IMG/VR virus record: IMGVR_UViG_3300034117_002447
Location: 124,001-188,000 of that record
DNA length: 64,000 nt
Reading direction: 5' to 3' (one strand)
The notes beneath the pieces are model-generated. The model searched no databases. It had not been told where the DNA came from and saw only the letters and a program-made list of their open reading frames with translations. This document shows positions 575 through 62,666 of the stretch, in pieces. The position numbers were made by a program, and so were the translations under genes. How positions within the stretch are numbered: the stretch's first letter is position 1; each line of letters starts with the position of its first letter.

Positions 575-790
575 TTAGTTACTGTTTTTCTTGGCATTTT
601 CCAGACAGGCTTGGAACTCTTCTTCGGTTAAGAAGTCTGAATCTTCTATAACCAGCTTCTTTAAGGTTGCTGCCTGGATCTCTTTTACTAGGGAGTCCTT
701 ATCTACCTTACCTTTAAATAGATCTCCTTCTGCAAAGAGTATATCTACCGCCATCTCGGCCATGGTACTTGCGTGTTCCATTGTTAGCAT
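575..790 (-). CDS. Hypothetical protein
   Basis: 71-aa acidic ORF; start overlaps the end of the sigma gene. Confidence 0.6.
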   Translation of the reverse strand: MLTMEHASTMAEMAVDILFAEGDLFKGKVDKDSLVKEIQAATLKKLVIEDSDFLTEEEFQACLENAKKNSN

Positions 791-1512
791 GATACTACCT
801 CCTTTCTCATTTGCGCTCTAGCAACTTTAAGAGAACGATTTACTTCTGATGGAGTCTTACCAATTAACTCTGCAATTTCTTTTGTTGATAATCCATCGCC
901 AACCAATCCATAAAATAACTCTACGATTTGGCGATCGCTTGCTTTTAATTTGCCAAGTAATCGGGCAAGAATCATGTCTCTCTCTTGGTTCTCGAATGGA
1001 TCAGCGAAATCGGTCTTAAGAATCAAGTCGCCGATTGTTGTTGCACTGTCCTCGTCCCCGACTGGTTTGTCAATCGCAACGTTAGTAAGATTGATTTCTT
1101 CGCCTTTCATTTTACGTTTGTAAAGATCGTATTCCTGATTTACTGGAATTCTAACGGTTCTTCCCAAGTCGCAAAGAGCAAGGTTAAGACGCTTGCGAAT
1201 CCAGAACTGAGCGTAAGTAATAAACTTAACATCTTTGTCTGACGTAAACTTGCGAGCGGCTTCGATTAGACCAGCGTTTCCTTCTTGGATGAGGTCATCG
1301 ATTGGCAGACCCATACCAATAAACTTGTTGGCTAAGGTTACAACGAACTTAAGGTTCGCGGTGACTAGGGAGTTAAGCGCTTCGTCATCTCCTAACTGGA
1401 TTCTGTCAGCTAACGCTCCTTCTTCGCATTTACTTAACGGTCTAGCCAATCCGTCCAGGCTTTTAAAGTATTGGGGTAGTCCCGCACTTGTTTCGAATCT
1501 TGTATTTTTCAT
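784..1512 (-). CDS. RNA polymerase sigma-70 family factor (RpoD/RpoH-like, no region 1.1)
   Basis: ANLKFVVTLANKF, DDLIQEGNAGLIEAARKF, KFITYAQFWIR, RTVRIP, region 4 HTH LSTKEIAELIG; start moved to ATG 1512 downstream of early promoter. Confidence 0.92.
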   Translation of the reverse strand: MKNTRFETSAGLPQYFKSLDGLARPLSKCEEGALADRIQLGDDEALNSLVTANLKFVVTLANKFIGMGLPIDDLIQEGNAGLIEAARKFTSDKDVKFITYAQFWIRKRLNLALCDLGRTVRIPVNQEYDLYKRKMKGEEINLTNVAIDKPVGDEDSATTIGDLILKTDFADPFENQERDMILARLLGKLKASDRQIVELFYGLVGDGLSTKEIAELIGKTPSEVNRSLKVARAQMRKEVVSC

Positions 1513-1612
1513 GGTTTGATTTTTTAATTGATTAATATGATACAAATATAAAAAGAATAATTGATATAAAAAAATATTTTATGACTTATTTTTAAAAAGT
1601 TTTACTAGGGAG

Positions 1613-2053
1613 TTAAGCAGCTACTTCCTCTTGGCTGTTTCGGACGAACGCTTTGTCTGCCCAAGTCTTAGCGTTACACAGTCTGTAATTAGTTTGACTG
1701 TATAGATTACTATTAGACCAGTCCTGATTGATATCGCCTACCTCCATTTCAAGAAACATTGCAGTATCCATTAGGATTATCGTGTTACCTTTGCGGGCGA
1801 AGACAGTTAACCATGTATTAAAGCCTTCCGCTCTGAACTCGATGGTTTGTAAAGCTCCCTTCTTGAATCCGCGGAAAACATCCATTGCTGTCTTCCAGCT
1901 TGCGCCGCTAGACCATTTAGACTGGATTCCATGGTCGTTTACTACCGTCATGAATCCGGCCTGAACTTTAACGATTGCGCGGTATTCGCCTGCTTGACCT
2001 GTTATAAAGTCTACTTGGCCGATTCTTTCTGAGTTAATGATTTGATTTTTCAT
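1613..2053 (-). CDS. Hypothetical early protein
   Basis: 146-aa ORF downstream of promoter 2085. Confidence 0.8.
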   Translation of the reverse strand: MKNQIINSERIGQVDFITGQAGEYRAIVKVQAGFMTVVNDHGIQSKWSSGASWKTAMDVFRGFKKGALQTIEFRAEGFNTWLTVFARKGNTIILMDTAMFLEMEVGDINQDWSNSNLYSQTNYRLCNAKTWADKAFVRNSQEEVAA

Positions 2054-2148
2054 GTTGGTTTGATTTAAGAGTTAATTGATATAGCAAATATAAAAAGAAT
2101 AATTGACACTAAAAAATTTATTATGACTTATTTTACTAGGGAGTCCGA

Positions 2149-2630
2149 CTATGCGGTAGGCAGGAATCCGAATTGGGATAGAACTCTTAGACCCAAAAGT
2201 TCCAGGTCCGTAAGTCGATTGAAAACATTCCGGTCCAATCCAAAACCAGACTCGATACTTCCGGGTGGGTTAACTTGCGGCCGCACTTGCAACAGGCACC
2301 AGCATGCTGGATTTCTGTGTTGCGTAGGCTAGCTGGATTCGATAGCACTCTCACCAACCAGTCCGTGATTTGGATTTCTCTATCCGAAATATTCGCTGCT
2401 CGCTTGAAGCGACGAGTATCCGAGAAGAAGGCTCCAACGTAGCGGTAGCCGATTTCGCCGTCGCCCAATAGAGCAAGACTCATGAAGTAACAGTTGCTTA
2501 GCTGGCCAGTTGTACGGTCCTTGCGGCGTTTCATCTTGATTTTTATCCATTGGCCTGTAGTTGGATTAGTAATAGTCAACTGTGCTTTTCCAGCAAGGGC
2601 AGCGATAGCGAAGTGATTAGGATTTATCAT
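2149..2630 (-). pseudogene. DUF6011-like Zn-finger protein with frameshifted C-terminus
   Basis: CCKCGRKLTHPE, then the motif SIESGFG..PEC appears in other frames; one A missing at 2259-2260, TTGGA tandem duplication at 2234-2243; alternative frame stops at TAG 2149-2151. Confidence 0.6.
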
Positions 2631-2839
2631 ATTGGTAATAATTAATTGATTAAGTAAATATAACAAGAACTTTTGACAATAAAAAATTTTTGGCTAATTA
2701 TTTTCAGAAAAGTTATTAACAATCTAAAAAGTTTATTGTAGGTCGGAGTATACCCTCTGCGCTTGTTAGGCGAACCGTTTAATTATAAAGCTAATATAAG
2801 CAGAATACTTGACAGTAAAAAACTTTTTGTGAATTATTT

Positions 2840-3076
2840 TTAAACTCGTTGGATGGATGGATCGACAACTCTCCACGGTCTCGAGGGATCGATCACGGAT
2901 ATAATGTTAGGAATCAAATTATTCTCTATCCATCGGGAAAATGTTTGACCACCGAACTGCATGTCTCGATTTAAGCTCTCATGAAGCTCCATTGGAATAT
3001 CAACACTTGCGGAAATTCTACCGGTTTGAGATCGTGAATCCGTGTATTCAACTGTAAATGTTATGTTAGACGCCAT
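2840..3076 (-). CDS. Hypothetical early protein
   Basis: 78-aa ORF with ATG. Confidence 0.7.
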   Translation of the reverse strand: MASNITFTVEYTDSRSQTGRISASVDIPMELHESLNRDMQFGGQTFSRWIENNLIPNIISVIDPSRPWRVVDPSIQRV

Positions 3077-3103
3077 AGTTTCTAGATTTTAAAAGATTAA
3101 TAA

Positions 3104-3226
3104 TTATCCGCAGTATACTGATTTACCGCAGTCTCTGCATTTTACGAGCTTCATTCCTGAAGCATGACGAACCGCAACGTAGGTATTTACGTGTTGGCAA
3201 GCTGGTTTCTGTTCTTGATTTTTCAT
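3104..3226 (-). CDS. Small Cys/His Zn-ribbon-like protein (40 aa)
   Basis: MKNQEQKPACQHVN...KCRDCGKSVYCG; ATG 3226 just downstream of promoter 3231. Confidence 0.65.
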   Translation of the reverse strand: MKNQEQKPACQHVNTYVAVRHASGMKLVKCRDCGKSVYCG

Positions 3227-3535
3227 AATACAAATATAACTAAAAAAGCCGAGACTAAAAAATCCCGGCTCATTTATTTTTAAAATAATTTTAGGCTTCG
3301 TCGCCGATGAGGTCCCATGCGGTTTCGCCGGTTCCGCGGCCGTCGCAGGTAATTTCATAGTTTGGGTCCATGCCGCTCGAGAGCACGTCGTCCAGTAATT
3401 CGGAGATTGAGCGAAATTCTTTGGTGTAGTAATTACATTTTAAACTGTACATATTTTCTTGTTTTAATTGGTTAATACAAATATAACAAAAAAAGCCGAG
3501 ACTAAAAAATCTCGGCTCATTTATTTTCAAAAAAG
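3227..3535 (-). repeat. Two near-identical ~60-bp direct repeats (3227-3290, 3474-3535), each a terminator hairpin fused to an early promoter
   Basis: aatacaaatataac(t/a)aaaaaagccgagactaaaaaatc(c/t)cggctcatttatttt present twice. Confidence 0.9.
3291..3452 (-). CDS. Hypothetical early protein (53 aa)
   Basis: MYSLKCNYYTKEFRSISELLDDV...; ATG 3452 downstream of promoter 3478. Confidence 0.75.
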   Translation of the reverse strand: MYSLKCNYYTKEFRSISELLDDVLSSGMDPNYEITCDGRGTGETAWDLIGDEA

Positions 3536-3537
3536 TT

Positions 3538-3915
3538 TTATCCAAAGATAATGTCTTCGTAAAATACGGTTTGAATAATTACGTCCGCCGTTTCCGCATC
3601 GTCGTTTTCTTCAACCATTTGCAACAAGAATCTCAATGGAGTTTTATCCACTCGAGCATGGACATCAGCTAACGTAATCGTTCGCGTATATTCTCCTTCG
3701 CATTCTTCGTCTACCATAGTTAGACCTTTTCCGTCTCGTAAAATCTGTAACAAGACATCTTCGTAACAAGGAGATTCCAATTTCTTGCGCGCTTCTTCGT
3801 AATCCGCCTTCTCGAAAGTAAGATCTAATCCATAGCCTGACATATAGCCTAGCCCGTTGCAAAGAGCAGTATGAAAAAATTCTTCTGCTTCTTTTTGATT
3901 TAATTTAATTTCCAT
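3538..3915 (-). CDS. Hypothetical early protein
   Basis: MEIKLNQKEAEEFFHTALCNGLGY...ADVIIQTVFYEDIIFG; ATG 3915 downstream of promoter 3958. Confidence 0.8.
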   Translation of the reverse strand: MEIKLNQKEAEEFFHTALCNGLGYMSGYGLDLTFEKADYEEARKKLESPCYEDVLLQILRDGKGLTMVDEECEGEYTRTITLADVHARVDKTPLRFLLQMVEENDDAETADVIIQTVFYEDIIFG

Positions 3916-4020
3916 TTCTTTTTTGGTTTTAAAGTTAATTAATATTATTATACAGTACAAATATAAAAAGAATACTTGACACTAAAAAATTTATTTTTAA
4001 ATATTTTCTCTTTAACCCAC

Positions 4021-4044
4021 AAAGGAATCTTATCTTAAGATTCC
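4021..4044 (-). terminator. Intrinsic terminator after the tRNA-like RNA
   Basis: GGAATCTTA-AGA-TAAGATTCC-TTT on the minus strand. Confidence 0.65.
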
Positions 4045-4079
4045 AATGAGGTATCAATCAACCAAACCAATAGTTGTTG

Positions 4080-4187
4080 TGGAGAGATCCGGATTCGAAC
4101 CGGATGGACGAACTCAAGCAACTGTTTGACGTACAGCGTTTCGTCCTCACTTTTGTCAAATACCTCGTTCCAACGAGGATTCTCTCC
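4080..4187 (-). ncRNA. Atypical tRNA-like RNA (108 nt) with a 57-nt non-canonical centre; no encoded CCA
   Basis: Acceptor GGAGAGA/TCTCTCC + A73; D-arm CCTC-GTTGGAAC-GAGG; T-arm TCCGG-TTCGAAT-CCGGA; no canonical YU-NNN-R anticodon loop. Confidence 0.75.
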
Positions 4188-4192
4188 TTGTC

Positions 4193-4471
4193 TTAGTTAA
4201 GACTTATTCCAAGACCAGCAAGCATTGAGCTTAACGAGTCTTCTTCTTTCTTCTGCACCGGCTCGTTTGCTCGAGCAGAATATTCTTTAATCATAGATTC
4301 CAAAAGCTGAATTCCTTCTTCCGTTTCTACTGCACCAATTGCTGCGAGTAGAGTCTTGCCGATTACCAATAATTCAGGTTCTTGTTTTTTTAGACCGCCG
4401 ATAATCAAGCTCTGTGCTAGATCGGTTAAATCCAATAAGATCTTTGTTTTATCTGAGCTTATATTTTGCAT
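4193..4471 (-). CDS. Hypothetical protein
   Basis: 92-aa ORF; TAGTATAAT box at 4504-4512. Confidence 0.75.
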   Translation of the reverse strand: MQNISSDKTKILLDLTDLAQSLIIGGLKKQEPELLVIGKTLLAAIGAVETEEGIQLLESMIKEYSARANEPVQKKEEDSLSSMLAGLGISLN

Positions 4472-4562
4472 GGTCTGTTTCTCCTTCCGTTTGTTATATA
4501 ATTATTATACTAAAAAGCCGGACCCATTGGACCCGGCTTCTAGAGAAAGAGATTCGGATAGC

Positions 4563-4733
4563 TTAGTATCCGTTTAATCTTTTGTTTTCCGCATAGACGC
4601 TGGTCCAAAACTCGTTGAATCCTAATTTCTCGTCCGGCTCGACTGTGCGCGCAACGCGTAGAGTTCCGTACGTTAAATCAATTGTTTCTCCTTGTGGTTC
4701 TCCAAAGAATAATTTAGCTAAGAATTTTTGCAT
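4563..4733 (-). CDS. Hypothetical early protein (56 aa, not in ORF track)
   Basis: MQKFLAKLFFGEPQGETIDLTYGTL...RLNGY*; downstream of promoter 4760. Confidence 0.7.
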   Translation of the reverse strand: MQKFLAKLFFGEPQGETIDLTYGTLRVARTVEPDEKLGFNEFWTSVYAENKRLNGY

Positions 4734-4817
4734 GGTTTCTGGTTTTAGTTGTTATAATACAAATATAATAATAATCTTTGATACTAGAAAATATTTTATC
4801 CTAGAGTTATTAACAAT

Positions 4818-5765
4818 TTACCAACCGCTGCCAAACGGGGTATATGCAATGGCTGACTCTCGGAAATTAGGATTAAAATATCTTAACTTATCTTTTTGAT
4901 TCTTCTTTAATAATTTAAAAGATAATTTAATCCGTTGTCTAACCGTCTCGACACTGCAATCGAATTCTTCCGCTATTGTCTTTATTGGAGTCGGTTGGTA
5001 TCCATCGAGACCGTAATGCTTTACTATAAACAAGCGATTATCTCCTTTCAAGGTTTTGAGCATTGCTTCAACCACAGACTCTTTCTCGAGACCAAGCAGA
5101 TCTGAATCAGTTGATATACTTGAAGCAAGGCTGTCTATAAATTCTTCGTTCGAGTCCGGGTCTATCTTTTGATTAAGACTCTTTTCCCAACTTGTTGCGG
5201 TTAAGACCTCAGCTATTCTAGACGCAGTTACCTTGGTATCTGACATTGCTGGATCCGCCGCTACGATATCTGCTATTTCTTCAAACGTTGCGCTACGCTC
5301 GGTCTTGTGCTCAACCTGCTCCGCCGCTTTTAGAGCCCGAGTTACAATTAGTTGGGCAGAGTTTGGAACACGAACCGTCTTGACATTATGTTGAAGACAA
5401 TCTAGTATTGCTTGTTTAATCCAAAAAACCGCGTATGATATAAACTTAAACCCACGGTCCGGCTCGAACCTGTGAACCGCCTTGACCAGACCAAGATTAC
5501 CTTCAGAAACCAGATCTTCCAGTGTTAGGCTGGTCTTGTTGACTAGGCTTGAATACTGTTTGGCAACCGTAATTACAAAAAGCAGATTCGCTTTTATAAT
5601 CCGCTGTTCCGCGGTCGGGTCTCCAGCTTTAAACCGCCTAAACAATGCTATCTCTTCCTCGCTCGAGAGAACCGGAGTCCGGCGGATTTCCTGCAAATAC
5701 CGGTTAAAGCTTTCGCGGTTATCAGCAACTGTTCTAACTATATTCTTTGAATCTATCTTCTTCAT
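4818..5765 (-). CDS. RNA polymerase sigma factor, Bacteroidetes RpoD-like
   Basis: YLQEIRRTPVLSSEEE, KANLLFVITVAKQY, DLVSEGNLGLVKAVHRFEPDRGFKFISYAVFWIKQAI, region 4 IAEEFDCSVETVRQ. Confidence 0.95.
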   Translation of the reverse strand: MKKIDSKNIVRTVADNRESFNRYLQEIRRTPVLSSEEEIALFRRFKAGDPTAEQRIIKANLLFVITVAKQYSSLVNKTSLTLEDLVSEGNLGLVKAVHRFEPDRGFKFISYAVFWIKQAILDCLQHNVKTVRVPNSAQLIVTRALKAAEQVEHKTERSATFEEIADIVAADPAMSDTKVTASRIAEVLTATSWEKSLNQKIDPDSNEEFIDSLASSISTDSDLLGLEKESVVEAMLKTLKGDNRLFIVKHYGLDGYQPTPIKTIAEEFDCSVETVRQRIKLSFKLLKKNQKDKLRYFNPNFRESAIAYTPFGSGW

Positions 5766-5833
5766 AAAGTATATCTTACCAAAAAAAGAAAGGGCCGATC
5801 TCTCGGCCCAGTACATCAGTTCTTCAGTAATGG

Positions 5834-13509: not shown

Positions 13510-14055
13510 TTATAGCTTAACCGCAAACAGACAGTTTGCGTATGCTGAGAATCGGTTCTTTTGAGTATCATAGCCGCCGTTTATATCGAATGCTGCTACT
13601 GTTACTTTTGGGTCGAGCAGCGCTGCATTATGACTAGCTGATTTAACCCATTCGTTGAATATTATAATAACGGTTGATTTATCAACGTTAACCGATTTTA
13701 GTGAGTTATAATTACTGCTGATTTTATAATGAGCACCGACATTTTCTCTGAAACTATATCGTGAAAAGTGTTTCTTCCAGTCCTGATCAAATTTTTCAAT
13801 TCGGGTAAGAGGGCCGGTGTAGTAAATTCCATCTGGAGTTAATGGATATTCGTAGTGCTCCAATGTGTCAGCACGTATCATCCAATTGACATGAAGAGTT
13901 ACAGCAGAGTCGAGAGTAGCTGAGTATTCTACTGGACTAAGCCCGTGACTTGCTCTGTGAGCATTCACCAATTCTAAAAAGATTTTATTTTCAGAATCTT
14001 GAGCAGTTGCGCTAATCGCAAAACTAAAAAGTATGATATGTATTAGCTTTTTCAT
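13510..14055 (-). CDS. Secreted CAP/SCP-domain protein
   Basis: Signal peptide; LELVNAHRASHGL, LEH, ENVG, EWVKSASHNAALLDP. Confidence 0.85.
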   Translation of the reverse strand: MKKLIHIILFSFAISATAQDSENKIFLELVNAHRASHGLSPVEYSATLDSAVTLHVNWMIRADTLEHYEYPLTPDGIYYTGPLTRIEKFDQDWKKHFSRYSFRENVGAHYKISSNYNSLKSVNVDKSTVIIIFNEWVKSASHNAALLDPKVTVAAFDINGGYDTQKNRFSAYANCLFAVKL

Positions 14056-14118: not shown

Positions 14119-15081
14119 ATGAGTAAAGTTAGAATATTATCAATAGACGGTGGTGGATTAAGAGGAATCGTTCCATTACTTATCCTTAAAGAAATTGAAA
14201 ATCAGCAAGGTAAAAAAATACACGAATTATTTGATGTCATAGTAGGTACCTCAACTGGCGGTATTATTGCATGCGGATTAACTTGTACGAAAGACGGAGT
14301 TAATCCTTATTTAACAATCGACCAGCTAATAGAACTTTACACAACTAAAGGTAATGTTATTTTCCCTTATAGTAAAAATATATTAGCTAAAGTAATTAGA
14401 GGAGTTAATTCAGTATTTAATCCTAAATTCTCTCCAAAAGGTTTAGACGGTTTATTGGAAAATTATTTTGGTGATATGATGATATCGCAATCACTAAAGC
14501 CTATCATCGTTAGTTCGTATGACCTAAAGAACAATGAAGTTATTATGTTTAAAACTAGAACTGCTAAATGGTCTAAAGAACGATTTGATGTTAGATTAAA
14601 AGATGTTTGTCGGGCTACGTCAGCCGCGCCGACCTACTTACCGTCATACGAAATGGTGTTTGATGGCAAAGACCGGATCTTAGTGGATGGTGGTGTTTAC
14701 ATTAACAATCCAGCAATGGCAGCAGTTGCTGAAGTTCTTAAAACAAGACCGGGTATTAAGATAGAAGATATTGAATGCTTATCGTTAGGCACCGGAAATC
14801 ATTCAGAATCGTTAGGTATTAAAACTGAAAGTTGGGGTATAGCTAATTGGGCACAACCTATAACAACAGTTATGATGCAAGCCTCTTCTAAATCAGTTGT
14901 TTACGAATGTCAACAAATATTAGAAAAGTATTTAAGAGTTCAATTAGAGATTGATGATGAAAAGAAAAGCGACATGTCAGATTCAAGACCGGCTACTACT
15001 CAATACATTGTTGATAAAGTAAATAAAGATATTATTAGTAATAAAAAAACAATGACTAATATTAAAAATTTCCTTAAATAA
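14119..15081 (+). CDS. Patatin-like phospholipase
   Basis: ILSIDGGGLRG, GTSTGG (GxSxG), SAAPTY, DGG. Confidence 0.95.
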   Translation: MSKVRILSIDGGGLRGIVPLLILKEIENQQGKKIHELFDVIVGTSTGGIIACGLTCTKDGVNPYLTIDQLIELYTTKGNVIFPYSKNILAKVIRGVNSVFNPKFSPKGLDGLLENYFGDMMISQSLKPIIVSSYDLKNNEVIMFKTRTAKWSKERFDVRLKDVCRATSAAPTYLPSYEMVFDGKDRILVDGGVYINNPAMAAVAEVLKTRPGIKIEDIECLSLGTGNHSESLGIKTESWGIANWAQPITTVMMQASSKSVVYECQQILEKYLRVQLEIDDEKKSDMSDSRPATTQYIVDKVNKDIISNKKTMTNIKNFLK

Positions 15082-19447: not shown

Positions 19448-19636
19448 TCATTTGATATGACCAGTAATCTCTTTGTAATACGCCCATAACTCTTGGCACT
19501 TTTCGTATTCTTCCTTGCTTTCCAAGTACTTAATTATATCTAGGACTTCATTCCAGTAGGCGGATGTGATTCCTTTTTTATCGACATCTTTATACTTTCT
19601 AGTCCATTCTCTCTCGTTTGCTATATCGATTGCCAT
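19448..19636 (-). CDS. Small protein with UVR-like EEYEKC motif
   Basis: IKYLESKEEYEKCQEL. Confidence 0.65.
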   Translation of the reverse strand: MAIDIANEREWTRKYKDVDKKGITSAYWNEVLDIIKYLESKEEYEKCQELWAYYKEITGHIK

Positions 19637-20594
19637 GACTGTACCCGAATTTTTGGCGAGGCTGTACCTCTATAGTATATTTAACCTTGGATCCAAGTAA
19701 TTCAGTAATGCATTCAACGAAATCCGCTGTGTGTAGACTTAGAACAGAGTCGTAATGGTCATCCCGATAACCTCCAAAAAGAGCACATGAAACCGGTAGA
19801 GGTTTTCCCAATAATTCGTCCATTTCTTTTACCCATCTCCAAAAAAGAGTAGAGCAAGCAACCCAATAATCAGTTTCGCATTGGCTTCCTAAGTTGTCAT
19901 CTGCATGAGAATCCGCTCCGTGACACCAAACAACATAGCCAATTTTACCGGCAAGGATCGCCGCCTTTGTTCGTTCCAACCAAATTGCCAAATCTTCTAA
20001 GTATCGATCATCATGGCCTATTGGATTAATATTGAAATCTCTAGGAACTGCCTTATTTAAGTCTTTGCAAAAAGTTCGGCTGTCCTCAATTGAATTTCCG
20101 AAATGACCGTCAAGATCAAAGTACGCTCCGCTTAATCCAAACTCTTCGTATATTTTAAGTGATGCAATTACCTGTCCACTAAACGTACAGAAACCGCTGC
20201 CTCCGCTTGGGCGAGCATGGTGAAATCCACTGGTTGGGCTGAAGCTTACTTGATCTGGATTTACGATTGAATTTCTGATCGCTGAGTACAACGAAGAGTT
20301 TGTGTATCTTATTGATTCAGCGAATTGAGGTGACCAAGACAATCCATTAGAACAGTATCGACCCCTTCCTTTGAAAAAGTCTTTCACGTAACTTTTTTCA
20401 TGGGCAATTCTGAAATCAGCATTCGAATATGGATTAAACTCTGAAGTAATTTCAAAATTATCAATTAGTCCGTGCATTTCAAGGTATTCCAATAAAAGCT
20501 TAGGCTTTAATGGAGACTTGCTGTAATTTGAAGTTTTATCGTTTTGTAAAACCTGCTTTGGATTATAAAACGTCTTTATTTTAGTAGATCGCAT
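19599..20594 (-). CDS. Zn-dependent histone deacetylase family (HDAC/AcuC-like) protein
   Basis: GFHHA, GSGFC, DLDGHFGN, GADSHADD, GGY. Confidence 0.93.
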   Translation of the reverse strand: MRSTKIKTFYNPKQVLQNDKTSNYSKSPLKPKLLLEYLEMHGLIDNFEITSEFNPYSNADFRIAHEKSYVKDFFKGRGRYCSNGLSWSPQFAESIRYTNSSLYSAIRNSIVNPDQVSFSPTSGFHHARPSGGSGFCTFSGQVIASLKIYEEFGLSGAYFDLDGHFGNSIEDSRTFCKDLNKAVPRDFNINPIGHDDRYLEDLAIWLERTKAAILAGKIGYVVWCHGADSHADDNLGSQCETDYWVACSTLFWRWVKEMDELLGKPLPVSCALFGGYRDDHYDSVLSLHTADFVECITELLGSKVKYTIEVQPRQKFGYSHGNRYSKRERMD

Positions 20595-26320: not shown

Positions 26321-27487
26321 TTAGTTACTTAGTGGTGCTTTAATTGATGGGTGTGATTGATAATCGACTAATTCAAAATCATCAATTAACCAATGTTCTG
26401 GCGTGAATGATGGTTCGTTTTTAAAATGCAATTTGATATTGCACTTAGGTAACTCAAATGGTTCTCTTGTACGGTACGGAATTTTATAAGCATCGTAGTA
26501 CTCAGACATACCTCCACCGAATGGCATCAGTTCATTAACTGCTTTGTTATATAAACGCAAGCTCATAGCATCCTTTAACATGGTCTCCCTTTCTTCTGGT
26601 GTATACTTTCTACCAATTTGTTCCTTTGCTTGTTCAATGTGGTTCAAATATAAATGAGTATCTCCTAAGTTTCCAATCAATTCATCAGGAATCATATTAA
26701 CTTCTTTTGCAATGATTTCTAGAAGAAGTCCGTAACTTGCAATATTGAACGGAAGGCCTAAGAATGTATCTACTGAACGTTGATTCCACATAAGGGAGAT
26801 TGCTCTGGTTGGAACATTCCATTGATTGATTTCAGAATGGGATAAGGTATCCGGCCCACCTCCATTATAGATTTGATTAAACATTTCTTGACTGACTAAG
26901 GATCTTCTTTCTTCTAAACTTAATTCTCTTGTATAACATTGAAATCCATAATGACAAGGTGGAAGTGTCATTTGGTCTAATTCACCTACATTCCATGCAT
27001 TTACCATTAATCGTCTTGAGTCTGGATTTGTTTTAAGGTCGTTGATTAGGTTTTGGATTTGGTCTACTCCTCCATCAAATATAGCGCCCCAATTTCTCCA
27101 TTGTCTACCATAAATTGGACCTAATTCACCCCAGGTCTTTGCTCTTAACGAATCATTTTTTATTGTATCAATAAACTCCATTATTGATAATGTATGGTCT
27201 GCTGTACTTTTGTATTTCTTATAAGCATCACCATCCCAAATATGACAATTATTGTCAACCAAATACTTAATATTTGTATCACCACGCAAGAACCACAATA
27301 ATTCAGTTACAATTGTTTTGAATGGCATCTTCTTAGTTGTAAGTAAAGGAAACCCTTCACTCATTTTATGACGGATCTGTCTACCGAATACTGAAATTGT
27401 TCCAGTACCGGTTCGGTCACTCTTCTCCACTCCATAATCTAAAATCGATTGAAGAAGATCGGTGTATTGTTTATCGAGTCGGTTCAT
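26321..27487 (-). CDS. thyA: Thymidylate synthase
   Basis: DRTGTGT, FPLLTTKK, ELLWFL, LPPCH, QRSVDTFLGLPFN, DTHLY; two in-frame insertions. Confidence 0.97.
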   Translation of the reverse strand: MNRLDKQYTDLLQSILDYGVEKSDRTGTGTISVFGRQIRHKMSEGFPLLTTKKMPFKTIVTELLWFLRGDTNIKYLVDNNCHIWDGDAYKKYKSTADHTLSIMEFIDTIKNDSLRAKTWGELGPIYGRQWRNWGAIFDGGVDQIQNLINDLKTNPDSRRLMVNAWNVGELDQMTLPPCHYGFQCYTRELSLEERRSLVSQEMFNQIYNGGGPDTLSHSEINQWNVPTRAISLMWNQRSVDTFLGLPFNIASYGLLLEIIAKEVNMIPDELIGNLGDTHLYLNHIEQAKEQIGRKYTPEERETMLKDAMSLRLYNKAVNELMPFGGGMSEYYDAYKIPYRTREPFELPKCNIKLHFKNEPSFTPEHWLIDDFELVDYQSHPSIKAPLSN

Positions 27488-62299: not shown

Positions 62300-62666
62300 G
62301 GGGATGACCGGATTTGACAGGAATTATCGGTTACACCTGCACGCCGAGGAAGATGCTAAGACTCGTTAAAATGTATTAAAACTATAAGTGGCAACACTAA
62401 TTTCTGGAGTCTAGTTAACGAAAGCGTTAACGCTCCTGTTACTGAAGAGCTTTTAGCTGCATAAGTGACCAAGCGGCAACTGCTTGACTAACCCAAAGTT
62501 GCAAAACCAGCATGGCGTAACGGCCAAGTCGAACCGTTACCGACTTTAGCTTTAAGTCGTTAAAGAATAAGATATTTGGTCCAGTTAGAAAATGGGACTA
62601 AGCGTGTAAACGAAGGTCTAATTAGAGGTTTTTTGGACGAGGGTTCGAATCCCTCCATCTCCACCA
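62300..62666 (+). ncRNA. ssrA: tmRNA; predicted tag (A)GNTNFWSLVNESVNAPVTEELLAA* at 62390-62464
   Basis: 5' GGGGATG / 3' CATCTCC-A-CCA with G3.U70; GATTTGAC; T-arm GAGGG-TTCGAAT-CCCTC; GCACGC/GCGTGT pairing; tag ends LAA. Confidence 0.95.

What the first reader, a model, noticed from the sequence alone, without database searches (positions are those of the whole stretch)
4080..4187. tRNA-shaped RNA whose anticodon arm appears replaced by an H-type pseudoknot
Seen on the minus strand: perfect acceptor, D and T arms enclose 57 nt with two interleaved helices, TTTGAC/GTCAAA and GGACGAA/TTCGTCC (5'S1, 5'S2, 3'S1, 3'S2 order, i.e. a pseudoknot). An alternative fold puts a GCTGT-ACGTCAA-ACAGT hairpin inside S2, but that loop lacks U33. 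The RNA has a defined unit: promoter 4504, ORF 4193-4471, RNA, terminator 4021-4044. Known: G1-C72, G2-C71, A3-U70 are Ser identity pairs, A73 is a Leu determinant, and neither bacterial synthetase needs the anticodon. Inference: a non-decoding tRNA mimic, such as a decoy for anticodon nucleases or tRNA sensors, a synthetase or EF-Tu ligand, or a mini tmRNA-like molecule.
Basis: partly seen in the sequence, partly recalled or inferred. Interest (0 to 1): 0.8.

Follow-up and report, generated by a model that had tools for sequence, protein, structure and literature searches.

The report
Phage tRNA look-alike without an anticodon
A freshwater jumbo phage carries an expressed, conserved 108-nt RNA with a perfect tRNA frame, only a vestige of an anticodon arm and an oversized extra arm; it is a real non-decoding tRNA mimic of unknown partner, but the proposed pseudoknot is only half supported.

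Summary
The RNA is real, at 4187..4080 on the minus strand. It has a 7-bp acceptor stem, a D arm, a canonical T arm and A73, but no encoded CCA.

Standard detection misses it. Relaxed searches class it nearest to tRNA-Sec (Rfam 30.5 bits; the threshold is 47).

I recovered five distinct natural variants:
- **Helix S2** (GGACGAA/UUCGUCC) is proven by compensatory changes at two pairs. It sits where a class-II variable arm sits.
- **Helix S1** (UUUGAC/GUCAAA) never varies. A 6-bp match has about 0.045 chance expectation, and S1 competes with two inner hairpins. The H-type pseudoknot is therefore unproven.
- **A 20-nt block** inside the S2 arm is invariant.

The RNA varies less than its surroundings: 11% of columns, against 21% in the ORF and 32-38% in the flanks.

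The element is accessory. One strain with a 97%-identical ORF lacks it precisely, and so does the sister phage clade.

Contigs from two lake-metatranscriptome studies cover the ORF plus the RNA as one ~400-nt unit. They end at the tRNA-like 3' end, not at the terminator.

Best reading: a non-decoding class-II (tRNA-Sec/allo-tRNA-like) mimic that is matured like a tRNA, with its variable arm as the functional part. The partner is unknown. A decoding tRNA, a mini-tmRNA and a neutral pseudogene are all unlikely.

The parts
4504..4509 (-). -10 box TATAAT of the ORF-RNA unit. It has no good -35 and overlaps the upstream terminator's U-tract.
   Evidence: Read from the sequence. The consensus scan did not call it. 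RNA contigs begin 18-35 nt downstream, at 4474-4486.
4193..4471 (-). 92-aa ORF with Shine-Dalgarno AAGGAG at 4481-4486. It encodes a conserved small helical protein of unknown function, transcribed together with the RNA.
   Evidence: It has 47 homologues, none with a Pfam domain. It has no Pfam or PHROG hit. The AlphaFold model is four helices (pLDDT 77) with no significant PDB match.
4080..4187 (-). The 108-nt tRNA-like RNA. Parts: acceptor stem 4187-4181/4087-4081, D arm 4178-4163, T arm 4104-4088, discriminator A at 4080. CCA is not encoded; CAACAAC follows.
   Evidence: Rfam tRNA-Sec 30.5 bits, E 1e-4. ARAGORN finds it only with the intron option. The frame has one variable column (D loop) in five variants.
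4147..4162 (-). Vestigial anticodon region UAUUUGACAAAAGUGA. It contains S1a (UUUGAC, 4160-4155). Its 3' half varies among strains.
   Evidence: Rfam aligns it as a 4-bp G.U-rich stem with loop UGACAAA, which has no U33. Alignment columns 35-37 vary.
4106..4146 (-). Oversized variable arm (41 nt). Helix S2 is 4146-4140/4112-4106, and the interior pairing is ambiguous.
   Evidence: S2 covariation: pair 5 is G-C, A-U or U-A; pair 7 is A-U or G-C (G.U in an RNA contig); pair 1 is G-C or G.U. The two interior pairings score -37.1 and -36.7 kcal/mol.
4113..4132 (-). Invariant 20-nt block ACGUCAAACAGUUGCUUGAG inside the arm. It includes S1b (GUCAAA, 4130-4125).
   Evidence: No variable column in five variants, while 11 of the other core columns vary. 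It is unique in the window.
4053..4070 (-). U/G-rich 18-nt motif UUGGUUUGGUUGAUUGAU in the 3' trailer. It is also conserved in the sister clade that lacks the RNA.
4021..4044 (-). Terminator-like hairpin (9-bp stem, 3-nt loop) followed by UUUGU.
   Evidence: The stem is invariant and the loop varies among variants. A hairpin sits at the same position in the sister clade. It does not meet the scan's criteria. RNA contigs do not reach it.

Best explanation
This is a non-decoding tRNA mimic with class-II architecture.

**What it looks like.** The frame resembles tRNA-Sec and allo-tRNAs: a 7/5 acceptor-T branch, an A-U linker, a long D stem with a UGGA tetraloop and a canonical T loop. The anticodon arm has decayed to a 16-nt remnant. 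The variable arm has grown to 41 nt and carries an invariant 20-nt module.

**Where it sits.** It is an accessory cargo element inserted between the stop codon of a small gene (in a region that looks like an early region) and that gene's terminator. The host is unknown.

**Shown.** It is transcribed together with the ORF. The stable RNA ends at or near the tRNA-like 3' end rather than at the terminator. It is under purifying and compensatory selection. It can be lost in nature.

**Inferred.**
- Host tRNA 3'-processing (RNase Z-type cleavage or exonucleolytic trimming), and then RNase P and the CCA-adding enzyme, treat it as a tRNA.
- The mature RNA then acts through anticodon-independent tRNA recognition. 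Candidate partners are SerRS, whose acceptor, C11-G24 and long-arm determinants are mostly present, or class-II-specific tRNA-targeting toxins of the AbiEii/MenT type.
- The conserved arm module would supply the specificity.
For: - **tRNA frame.** Seen. The best family match is tRNA-Sec, full length, 30.5 bits, E 1e-4.
- **S2 helix.** Compensatory changes at two pairs, with three pair types at one of them.
- **No usable anticodon loop.** Default ARAGORN is negative. All candidate loops lack U33.
- **Selection.** 11% of RNA columns vary, against 21% in the ORF and 32-38% in the flanks. The 20-nt block is invariant. One metatranscriptome variant has 24 differences, of which only one lies in the RNA, and that one makes a G.U pair in S2.
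- **Expression and ends.** Contigs at 4088-4474 and 4082-4479 come from two studies. No run covers 4017-4078.
- **Accessory status.** The RNA is precisely absent in L030 (97% identical ORF) and in the sister clade.
- **Precedent.** Irregular, non-translating allo-tRNA-like RNAs are described (PMC5389517). The MenT3 toxin selects tRNA-Ser through the long variable loop (PMC11162799).
Against: - No partner has been identified. Aminoacylation, CCA addition and RNase P cleavage were not observed.
- The RNA contigs bridge the ORF-RNA junction, so a free 108-nt species is not shown.
- The discriminator is A73, not the G73 that SerRS prefers.
- U8 and A14 are absent.
- The family is confined to one species-level phage lineage, so the covariation rests on five sequences.
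- The host is unknown.
- Contig ends are only approximate RNA ends.
Confidence: 0.45

Rival explanations
1. A purely cis-acting 3' module. The tRNA-like fold only serves to create and protect the 3' end of the ORF mRNA (tRNA punctuation or an exonuclease barrier), with no function in trans.
For: Two independent metatranscriptome contigs are the ORF plus the RNA as one ~400-nt unit, ending in the 3' acceptor strand. The element lies 5-8 nt after the stop codon in every variant.
Against: A stability module does not explain an invariant 20-nt block and a covarying 41-nt arm. The strain and the clade without the element keep a terminator hairpin at the same place, so the mRNA already has a 3' end.
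Confidence: 0.2
2. S1 and S2 form an H-type pseudoknot that takes the place of the anticodon arm, with S1 stacking under the D stem. This concerns structure only and is compatible with the best explanation.
For: Both S1 strands are invariant while neighbouring positions vary. A 6-bp Watson-Crick run has p of about 0.045. The loop lengths (8, 9 and 12 nt) are sterically permissive (inference).
Against: There is no covariation: all six pairs never vary. S1 alone adds only -3.6 kcal/mol, against -4.5 and -4.1 for the two inner hairpins, and it cannot coexist with either. The G-to-A change in L017 and the U-to-C change in L015 each fit one of the inner pairings.
Confidence: 0.2
3. A tRNA-scaffolded antisense RNA. 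The invariant block pairs with a host mRNA. The candidate target is an SNF2 helicase gene next to a DNA methyltransferase (defence-like) in Pseudanabaena.
For: There is an exact 18-19 nt match in antisense orientation in 8 Pseudanabaena genomes, one of them a Lake Mendota MAG. The gene has SNF2 and DrmD-like helicase C domains and an adjacent methyltransferase. Pseudanabaena loci are close in G+C and rank among the higher tetranucleotide matches.
Against: About 17 chance hits are expected for an 18-mer in 596 Gb, and 49 were seen. The flanks do not match. The nine hits are one conserved gene. The host of the phage is unknown and could not be established. I chose the pattern myself, so its boundaries carry no information.
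Confidence: 0.07
4. A true decoding tRNA. Either a Sec-type or opal-suppressor tRNA(UCA) after removal of a 25-nt insert, or a tRNA-Asp(GUC) on a long arm.
For: ARAGORN with the intron option calls tRNA-SeC(tca). The D arm is Sec-like. The inner hairpin loop ACGUCAA contains GUC.
Against: The 'intron' would sit at position 32/33, leave G33 and a mismatched stem, and bacteria have no enzyme for such an intron. S2 covaries across the supposed intron-exon boundary. No spliced joint appears in four RNA runs. The branch is 7/5, not 8/5. The GUC loop has C33 and sits about 12 bp out on the arm. The window's genes read normally in the standard code.
Confidence: 0.03
5. A neutral relic (a decaying tRNA pseudogene) or a mini-tmRNA.
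For: The element is dispensable in one natural strain. The tmRNA model aligns end to end, weakly (9.9 bits). A short frame ending in UGA exists in the core (read from the sequence).
Against: The RNA is conserved well above its flanks and shows compensatory changes, so it is not neutral. A3-U70 replaces G3.U70, ARAGORN makes no tmRNA call, 57 nt is too small for a message loop, and the phage already has a full tmRNA.
Confidence: 0.05

Closest known systems
tRNA-Sec (Rfam RF01852)
   Same: A-U linker, 6-bp D stem with a UGGN tetraloop, a long extra arm directly before the T stem, and a canonical T loop. The model aligns over its full length.
   Different: The score is below threshold (30.5 against 47). 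The acceptor-T branch is 12 bp (7/5) rather than 13 bp. There is no UCA anticodon loop. The discriminator is A73. The extra arm is about twice the usual length.
allo-tRNAs and irregular allo-tRNA-like RNAs (Mukai et al. 2017, PMC5389517; review PMC7609411)
   Same: Sec-like D arm and long V arm. Some members have destabilised or extra stems, do not translate in E. coli, and were proposed to be regulatory or linked to mobile or toxin-antitoxin elements. Relatives occur in phages.
   Different: Allo-tRNAs are defined by 8/4 or 9/3 branches and keep an anticodon arm. This RNA is 7/5 with a vestigial anticodon arm.
tmRNA tRNA-like domain
   Same: An acceptor and T arm with a helix starting 1 nt before the T stem and no anticodon. 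There is a UUUGAC motif after the D region, as in the phage's own tmRNA (GGAUUUGAC).
   Different: It has a full D stem and A3-U70 instead of G3.U70. It has no message domain and no pseudoknot ring. The tmRNA model scores 9.9 bits.
3' tRNA-like structures of plant RNA viruses, and MALAT1 mascRNA
   Same: A tRNA-shaped module at the 3' end of a longer coding or long RNA, which tRNA enzymes use to define ends (own knowledge; PMC5723415 for the viral structures).
   Different: There is no sequence homology. Those are eukaryotic systems. The viral structures build the acceptor with a pseudoknot, whereas here the acceptor is a plain 7-bp stem.
Phage T4 RNAC and RNAD
   Same: Small phage RNAs of unknown role encoded in the T4 tRNA region (PMC3014915).
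   Different: No similarity was tested or found. This RNA is not in a tRNA cluster; the 64-kb window holds no tRNA gene.

Membership tests
canonical tRNA | 7-bp acceptor stem, discriminator, and a 5-bp T stem with a UUCRANY loop | tested here: met
   G53-C61 and the U54/A58 positions are present.
canonical tRNA | 5-bp anticodon stem with a 7-nt loop carrying U33 | tested here: not met
   The candidate loops are UGACAAA (G33), ACGUCAA (C33) and CGUCAAA (G33). The stem positions vary without compensation.
canonical tRNA | Detected by ARAGORN default settings or at the Rfam gathering score | tested here: not met
canonical tRNA | CCA end and aminoacylation | not testable with these tools
   CCA is not encoded. 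The contigs stop 2-8 nt short of the end.
tRNA-Sec | Rfam RF01852 gathering score (47 bits) | tested here: not met
   30.5 bits, E 1e-4.
tRNA-Sec | 6-bp D stem with a 4-nt loop | tested here: met
   Present in 4 of 5 variants. L015 has G.A at the sixth pair.
tRNA-Sec | 13-bp acceptor-T branch (8/5 in bacteria) | tested here: not met
   The branch is 7/5. An eighth pair would be A.A.
tRNA-Sec | UCA anticodon | tested here: not met
   Obtained only by removing a hypothetical 25-nt insert at position 32/33.
allo-tRNA | 8/4 or 9/3 acceptor-T branch | tested here: not met
   The branch is 7/5. The definition is from PMC5389517.
tmRNA | G3.U70 alanine identity pair | tested here: not met
   The pair is A3-U70 in all variants.
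tmRNA | Message domain with pseudoknots; detected by ARAGORN or Rfam | tested here: not met
   ARAGORN -m finds nothing. The Rfam tmRNA model scores 9.9 bits against 47.
H-type pseudoknot | Two interleaved helices, each supported | tested here: inconclusive
   S2 is supported by covariation. S1 is invariant, has p of about 0.045, and competes with the inner hairpins.
3'-terminal tRNA-like structure of an mRNA | The tRNA-like fold forms the 3' end of a coding transcript | tested here: inconclusive
   RNA contigs run from the ORF start to 4082 and 4088. Contigs give only approximate ends and cannot distinguish a precursor from a mature RNA.

The most novel reading that the evidence does not exclude
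The tRNA frame is a scaffold and processing handle for a phage antisense RNA. The invariant 18-20 nt displayed on the oversized variable arm would pair with the mRNA of a methyltransferase-linked SNF2 helicase (a defence-like gene) of a cyanobacterial host such as Pseudanabaena. That would make it an RNA-based anti-defence factor.
Probability: 0.06. Interest if true: 0.9.

Novelty: new variant of a known kind. Interest (0 to 1): 0.55.

Why it matters
Phage tRNA genes are usually discussed as codon-usage or anti-nuclease tools that still decode. This RNA keeps everything that tRNA-handling enzymes recognise but has lost the anticodon arm, has a selected and enlarged variable arm, and is gained or lost between near-identical strains, as anti-defence cargo typically is.

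If its partner is a synthetase, a processing enzyme or a class-II-specific tRNA toxin, it would be a natural example of anticodon-independent tRNA mimicry in a bacterial virus. It would also be a compact scaffold for RNA engineering.

It shows as well that standard tRNA finders miss such elements.

Tried and rejected
**Searches for more distant homologues all failed.**
- Exact and gapped DNA patterns in IMG/VR returned only five identical copies of the same phage.
- The JGI metagenome scan gave one identical copy plus chance tRNAs.
- blastn against isolated phages gave only T-arm matches.
- A covariance model built from the five variants found no paralogue in the window, in sister-clade loci or elsewhere.
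They yielded five distinct RNA variants, one empty site and the RNA-less sister clade.

**The ORF gave nothing.** There is no family hit, no atlas lead and no structural match.

**The host could not be assigned.** Sigma-factor neighbours, UvdE homologues and their cluster names carry no taxon. The tetranucleotide ranking is only suggestive.

**No antisense target was found in the window.** There is no complement of 12 nt or more, and one 11-mer lies in an mRNA strand.

**Other readings rejected.**
- A K-turn reading of the internal loop, by inspection.
- A conserved peptide frame, because it has no start codon and its start is variable.
- The weak hairpin UAUUU-GACAA-AAGUG from the MFE fold, because three variants break it.

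Full report
**Context**

The window is part of a ~271-kb jumbo phage known only from freshwater metagenomes. Five IMG/VR contigs of 90-271 kb carry the identical locus.

The window encodes:
- a T4-type large terminase whose best matches are uncultured 460-640 kb phages and PAU-like or cyano-myoviruses, at 32-38% identity
- an ATP-dependent DNA ligase, PhoH, a 2OG-Fe(II) oxygenase, UvdE, Fpg and ThyA
- a full one-piece tmRNA at 62300-62666
- two sigma-70 family genes that flank the finding, in a stretch of small minus-strand ORFs

No tRNA gene is called anywhere in the 64 kb.

**The observation**

RNA position 1 is 4187 and position 108 is 4080 on the minus strand. The parts are:
- a 7-bp acceptor stem
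- an A-U linker
- a D arm
- 57 nt of core
- a 5-bp T stem with loop UUCGAAU
- A73

CAACAAC follows instead of CCA.

The MFE fold keeps the acceptor stem, D arm, S2 and T arm (-39.1 kcal/mol, z = -3.46). Default ARAGORN and Rfam at gathering thresholds see nothing here.

With permissive filters the best Rfam family is tRNA-Sec: full-length alignment, 30.5 bits against a threshold of 47, E about 1e-4. The alignment matches four things:
- the A-U linker
- the 6-bp D stem with the UGGA loop
- a weak 4-bp remnant of an anticodon stem with loop UGACAAA
- S2, aligned as the extra arm with a 28-nt insertion

ARAGORN finds a gene only when introns are allowed. It then calls tRNA-SeC(tca) with a 25-nt insert at the non-canonical position 32/33, leaving G33.

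**Related sequences**

The upstream 92-aa ORF has 47 relatives. One group is 93-100% identical and a second clade is 51-58% identical. Fetching their contigs gave five distinct versions of the RNA: the window, L015, L016, L017/L033 and L031.

Two negative cases are informative:
- In the sister clade the ORF is followed by 29 unrelated nucleotides. Then come the same U/G-rich 18-mer and a terminator hairpin, with no tRNA-like RNA.
- In L030, whose ORF is 97% identical, the RNA is absent with near-exact boundaries.

The RNA is therefore an accessory insertion between the stop codon and a pre-existing terminator. Because L030 nests among RNA-bearing strains, loss in L030 is the simplest reading (inference).

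**Structure from variation**

- The tRNA frame has one variable column, in the D loop. In L015 that change turns the sixth D pair into G.A.
- S2 shows compensatory double changes at two pairs. One pair is G-C, A-U or U-A in different strains. Another is A-U or G-C. An RNA-derived variant has the G.U intermediate, and a third pair is G-C or G.U.
- All six S1 pairs never vary, so S1 is neither supported nor refuted by variation.
- A 6-bp Watson-Crick run between the 16-nt linker and the 27 nt enclosed by S2 arises in 4.5% of shuffles.
- S1 alone adds -3.6 kcal/mol. The inner hairpin GCUGU/ACAGU adds -4.5, and an alternative pairing GUAC/G-UGC adds -4.1. For steric reasons neither inner pairing can coexist with a full S1 (inference from loop lengths).
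- The few changes in the 5' strand of the interior fit one or the other inner pairing.
- The 3' half of the linker (AAAAG) varies freely, which breaks the weak MFE hairpin.

I conclude three things. S2 is a real helix, and its position 1 nt before the T stem makes it a hypertrophied class-II variable arm. The anticodon arm is vestigial. The pseudoknot is possible but not demonstrated.

**Selection**

Across the five variants the share of variable columns is:

| Region | Variable columns |
|---|---|
| Upstream | 32% |
| ORF | 21% |
| RNA | 11% |
| Downstream | 38% |

Within the core, the 20-nt block ACGUCAAACAGUUGCUUGAG (4132-4113) has no change, while 11 other core columns vary. At the core's average rate this has a probability of about 0.015 (my arithmetic).

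The conservation of sequence, rather than of pairing only, points to a specific partner for the arm. This is inference.

**Expression**

Thirteen RNA runs were listed for the stretch, and nine hold part of it. I laid four of them on the window:
- A 387-nt contig covers 4088-4474.
- In another study, a 422-nt contig covers 4082-4479 and then runs straight into Illumina adapter sequence.

Neither contig has loose ends. No run covers 4017-4078, and there are no joints. Contamination by DNA would not give such boundaries.

The dominant RNA is therefore the ORF plus the tRNA-like element, ending within a few nucleotides of the tRNA-like 3' end and about 60 nt before the terminator. That is what tRNA-type 3' maturation would produce.

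Three limits apply. Contigs give only approximate ends. They do not show a free 108-nt species. They cannot show CCA.

**Mechanism**

Shown:
- The RNA is an expressed, constrained, dispensable tRNA look-alike.
- It has no usable anticodon loop.
- Its 3' end defines the transcript end.

Inferred:
- Host RNase Z or exonucleases, RNase P and the CCA-adding enzyme process it.
- It then works through anticodon-independent recognition.

Most serine identity elements recalled from the E. coli literature are present: G1-C72, G2-C71, A3-U70, C11-G24 and a long arm. The discriminator, however, is A rather than G (own knowledge; PMC7609411 for the arm and G73).

An abortive-infection-family toxin, MenT3, is documented to pick tRNA-Ser through the long variable loop (PMC11162799). 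A class-II decoy is therefore a concrete possibility, though untested.

**The Pseudanabaena lead**

I scanned 185,579 genomes for 18 nt of the invariant block. This gave 49 hits where about 17 are expected by chance.

Nine hits are one conserved 1420-aa SNF2 helicase gene of Pseudanabaena. The match is antisense to its mRNA, and the gene lies next to a DNA methyltransferase.

The flanks do not match, and I could not establish the phage's host. I therefore treat this as a probable coincidence that deserves a cheap test.

**Comparison with known systems, and novelty**

The RNA fails the defining tests of canonical tRNA, tRNA-Sec, allo-tRNA and tmRNA. It shares its frame with the tRNA-Sec/allo-tRNA group.

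Its closest conceptual relatives are the irregular, non-translating allo-tRNA-like RNAs (PMC5389517) and the 3' tRNA-like modules of eukaryotic viral and long non-coding RNAs. T4 RNAC and RNAD are a reminder that phage tRNA-region RNAs of unknown role exist (PMC3014915).

I rate it a new variant of a known kind, of moderate interest. The object is solid. Its function is open.

Noticed in passing
window 62300-62666 (+): The phage encodes a one-piece tmRNA (Rfam 129 bits) with an unusually long predicted tag, GNTNFWSLVNESVNAPVTEELLAA. CCA is encoded here, unlike in the tRNA-like RNA.
   Followed up: partly
window 4053-4070 (-); L006-L014, about 30-50 nt after the ORF stop: An 18-nt U/G-rich motif, TTGGTTTGGTTGATTGAT, lies between the ORF and the terminator hairpin. 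It is kept in the sister clade, whose ORF protein is only 52-58% identical, so it is more conserved than the gene. It is partly replaced in L017-L021.
   Followed up: no
L030:1074-1110, compared with L031:1482-1612: This natural strain has a 97% identical ORF but lacks the 108-nt RNA. AAAG stands where the other strains have CAA + RNA + CAA. The boundaries are not a clean target-site duplication.
   Followed up: partly
L058:4990-5007 (within ORF 1138-5400); also L036, L037, L043, L054, L059, L066, L077: 18-19 nt of the RNA's invariant block are the exact antisense of a conserved SNF2 helicase gene that sits next to a DNA methyltransferase in Pseudanabaena genomes, including a Lake Mendota MAG. 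Two MAGs carry two copies.
   Followed up: partly
window 784-1545 (-) and 4818-5816 (-): Two sigma-70 family genes lie within 5 kb, in a region of small ORFs that have their own strong -10 boxes. The gene order around the 92-aa ORF is rearranged relative to the sister clade.
   Followed up: no
window 2489-2499 (-), inside ORF 2187-2666: An 11-nt perfect complement to the RNA's invariant block (AACAGUUGCUU) lies in the mRNA strand of a nearby gene in the same small-ORF region. About 0.3 such hits are expected in the window.
   Followed up: no
window 26321-27487 (-): The thymidylate synthase ORF is 388 aa and matches the Pfam model in two stretches, which suggests an insertion in the enzyme.
   Followed up: no
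window 14119-15081, 19599-20594, 13510-14055: Unusual cargo for a phage: a patatin-like phospholipase, a protein with a histone-deacetylase domain, and a CAP/SCP-family protein.
   Followed up: no
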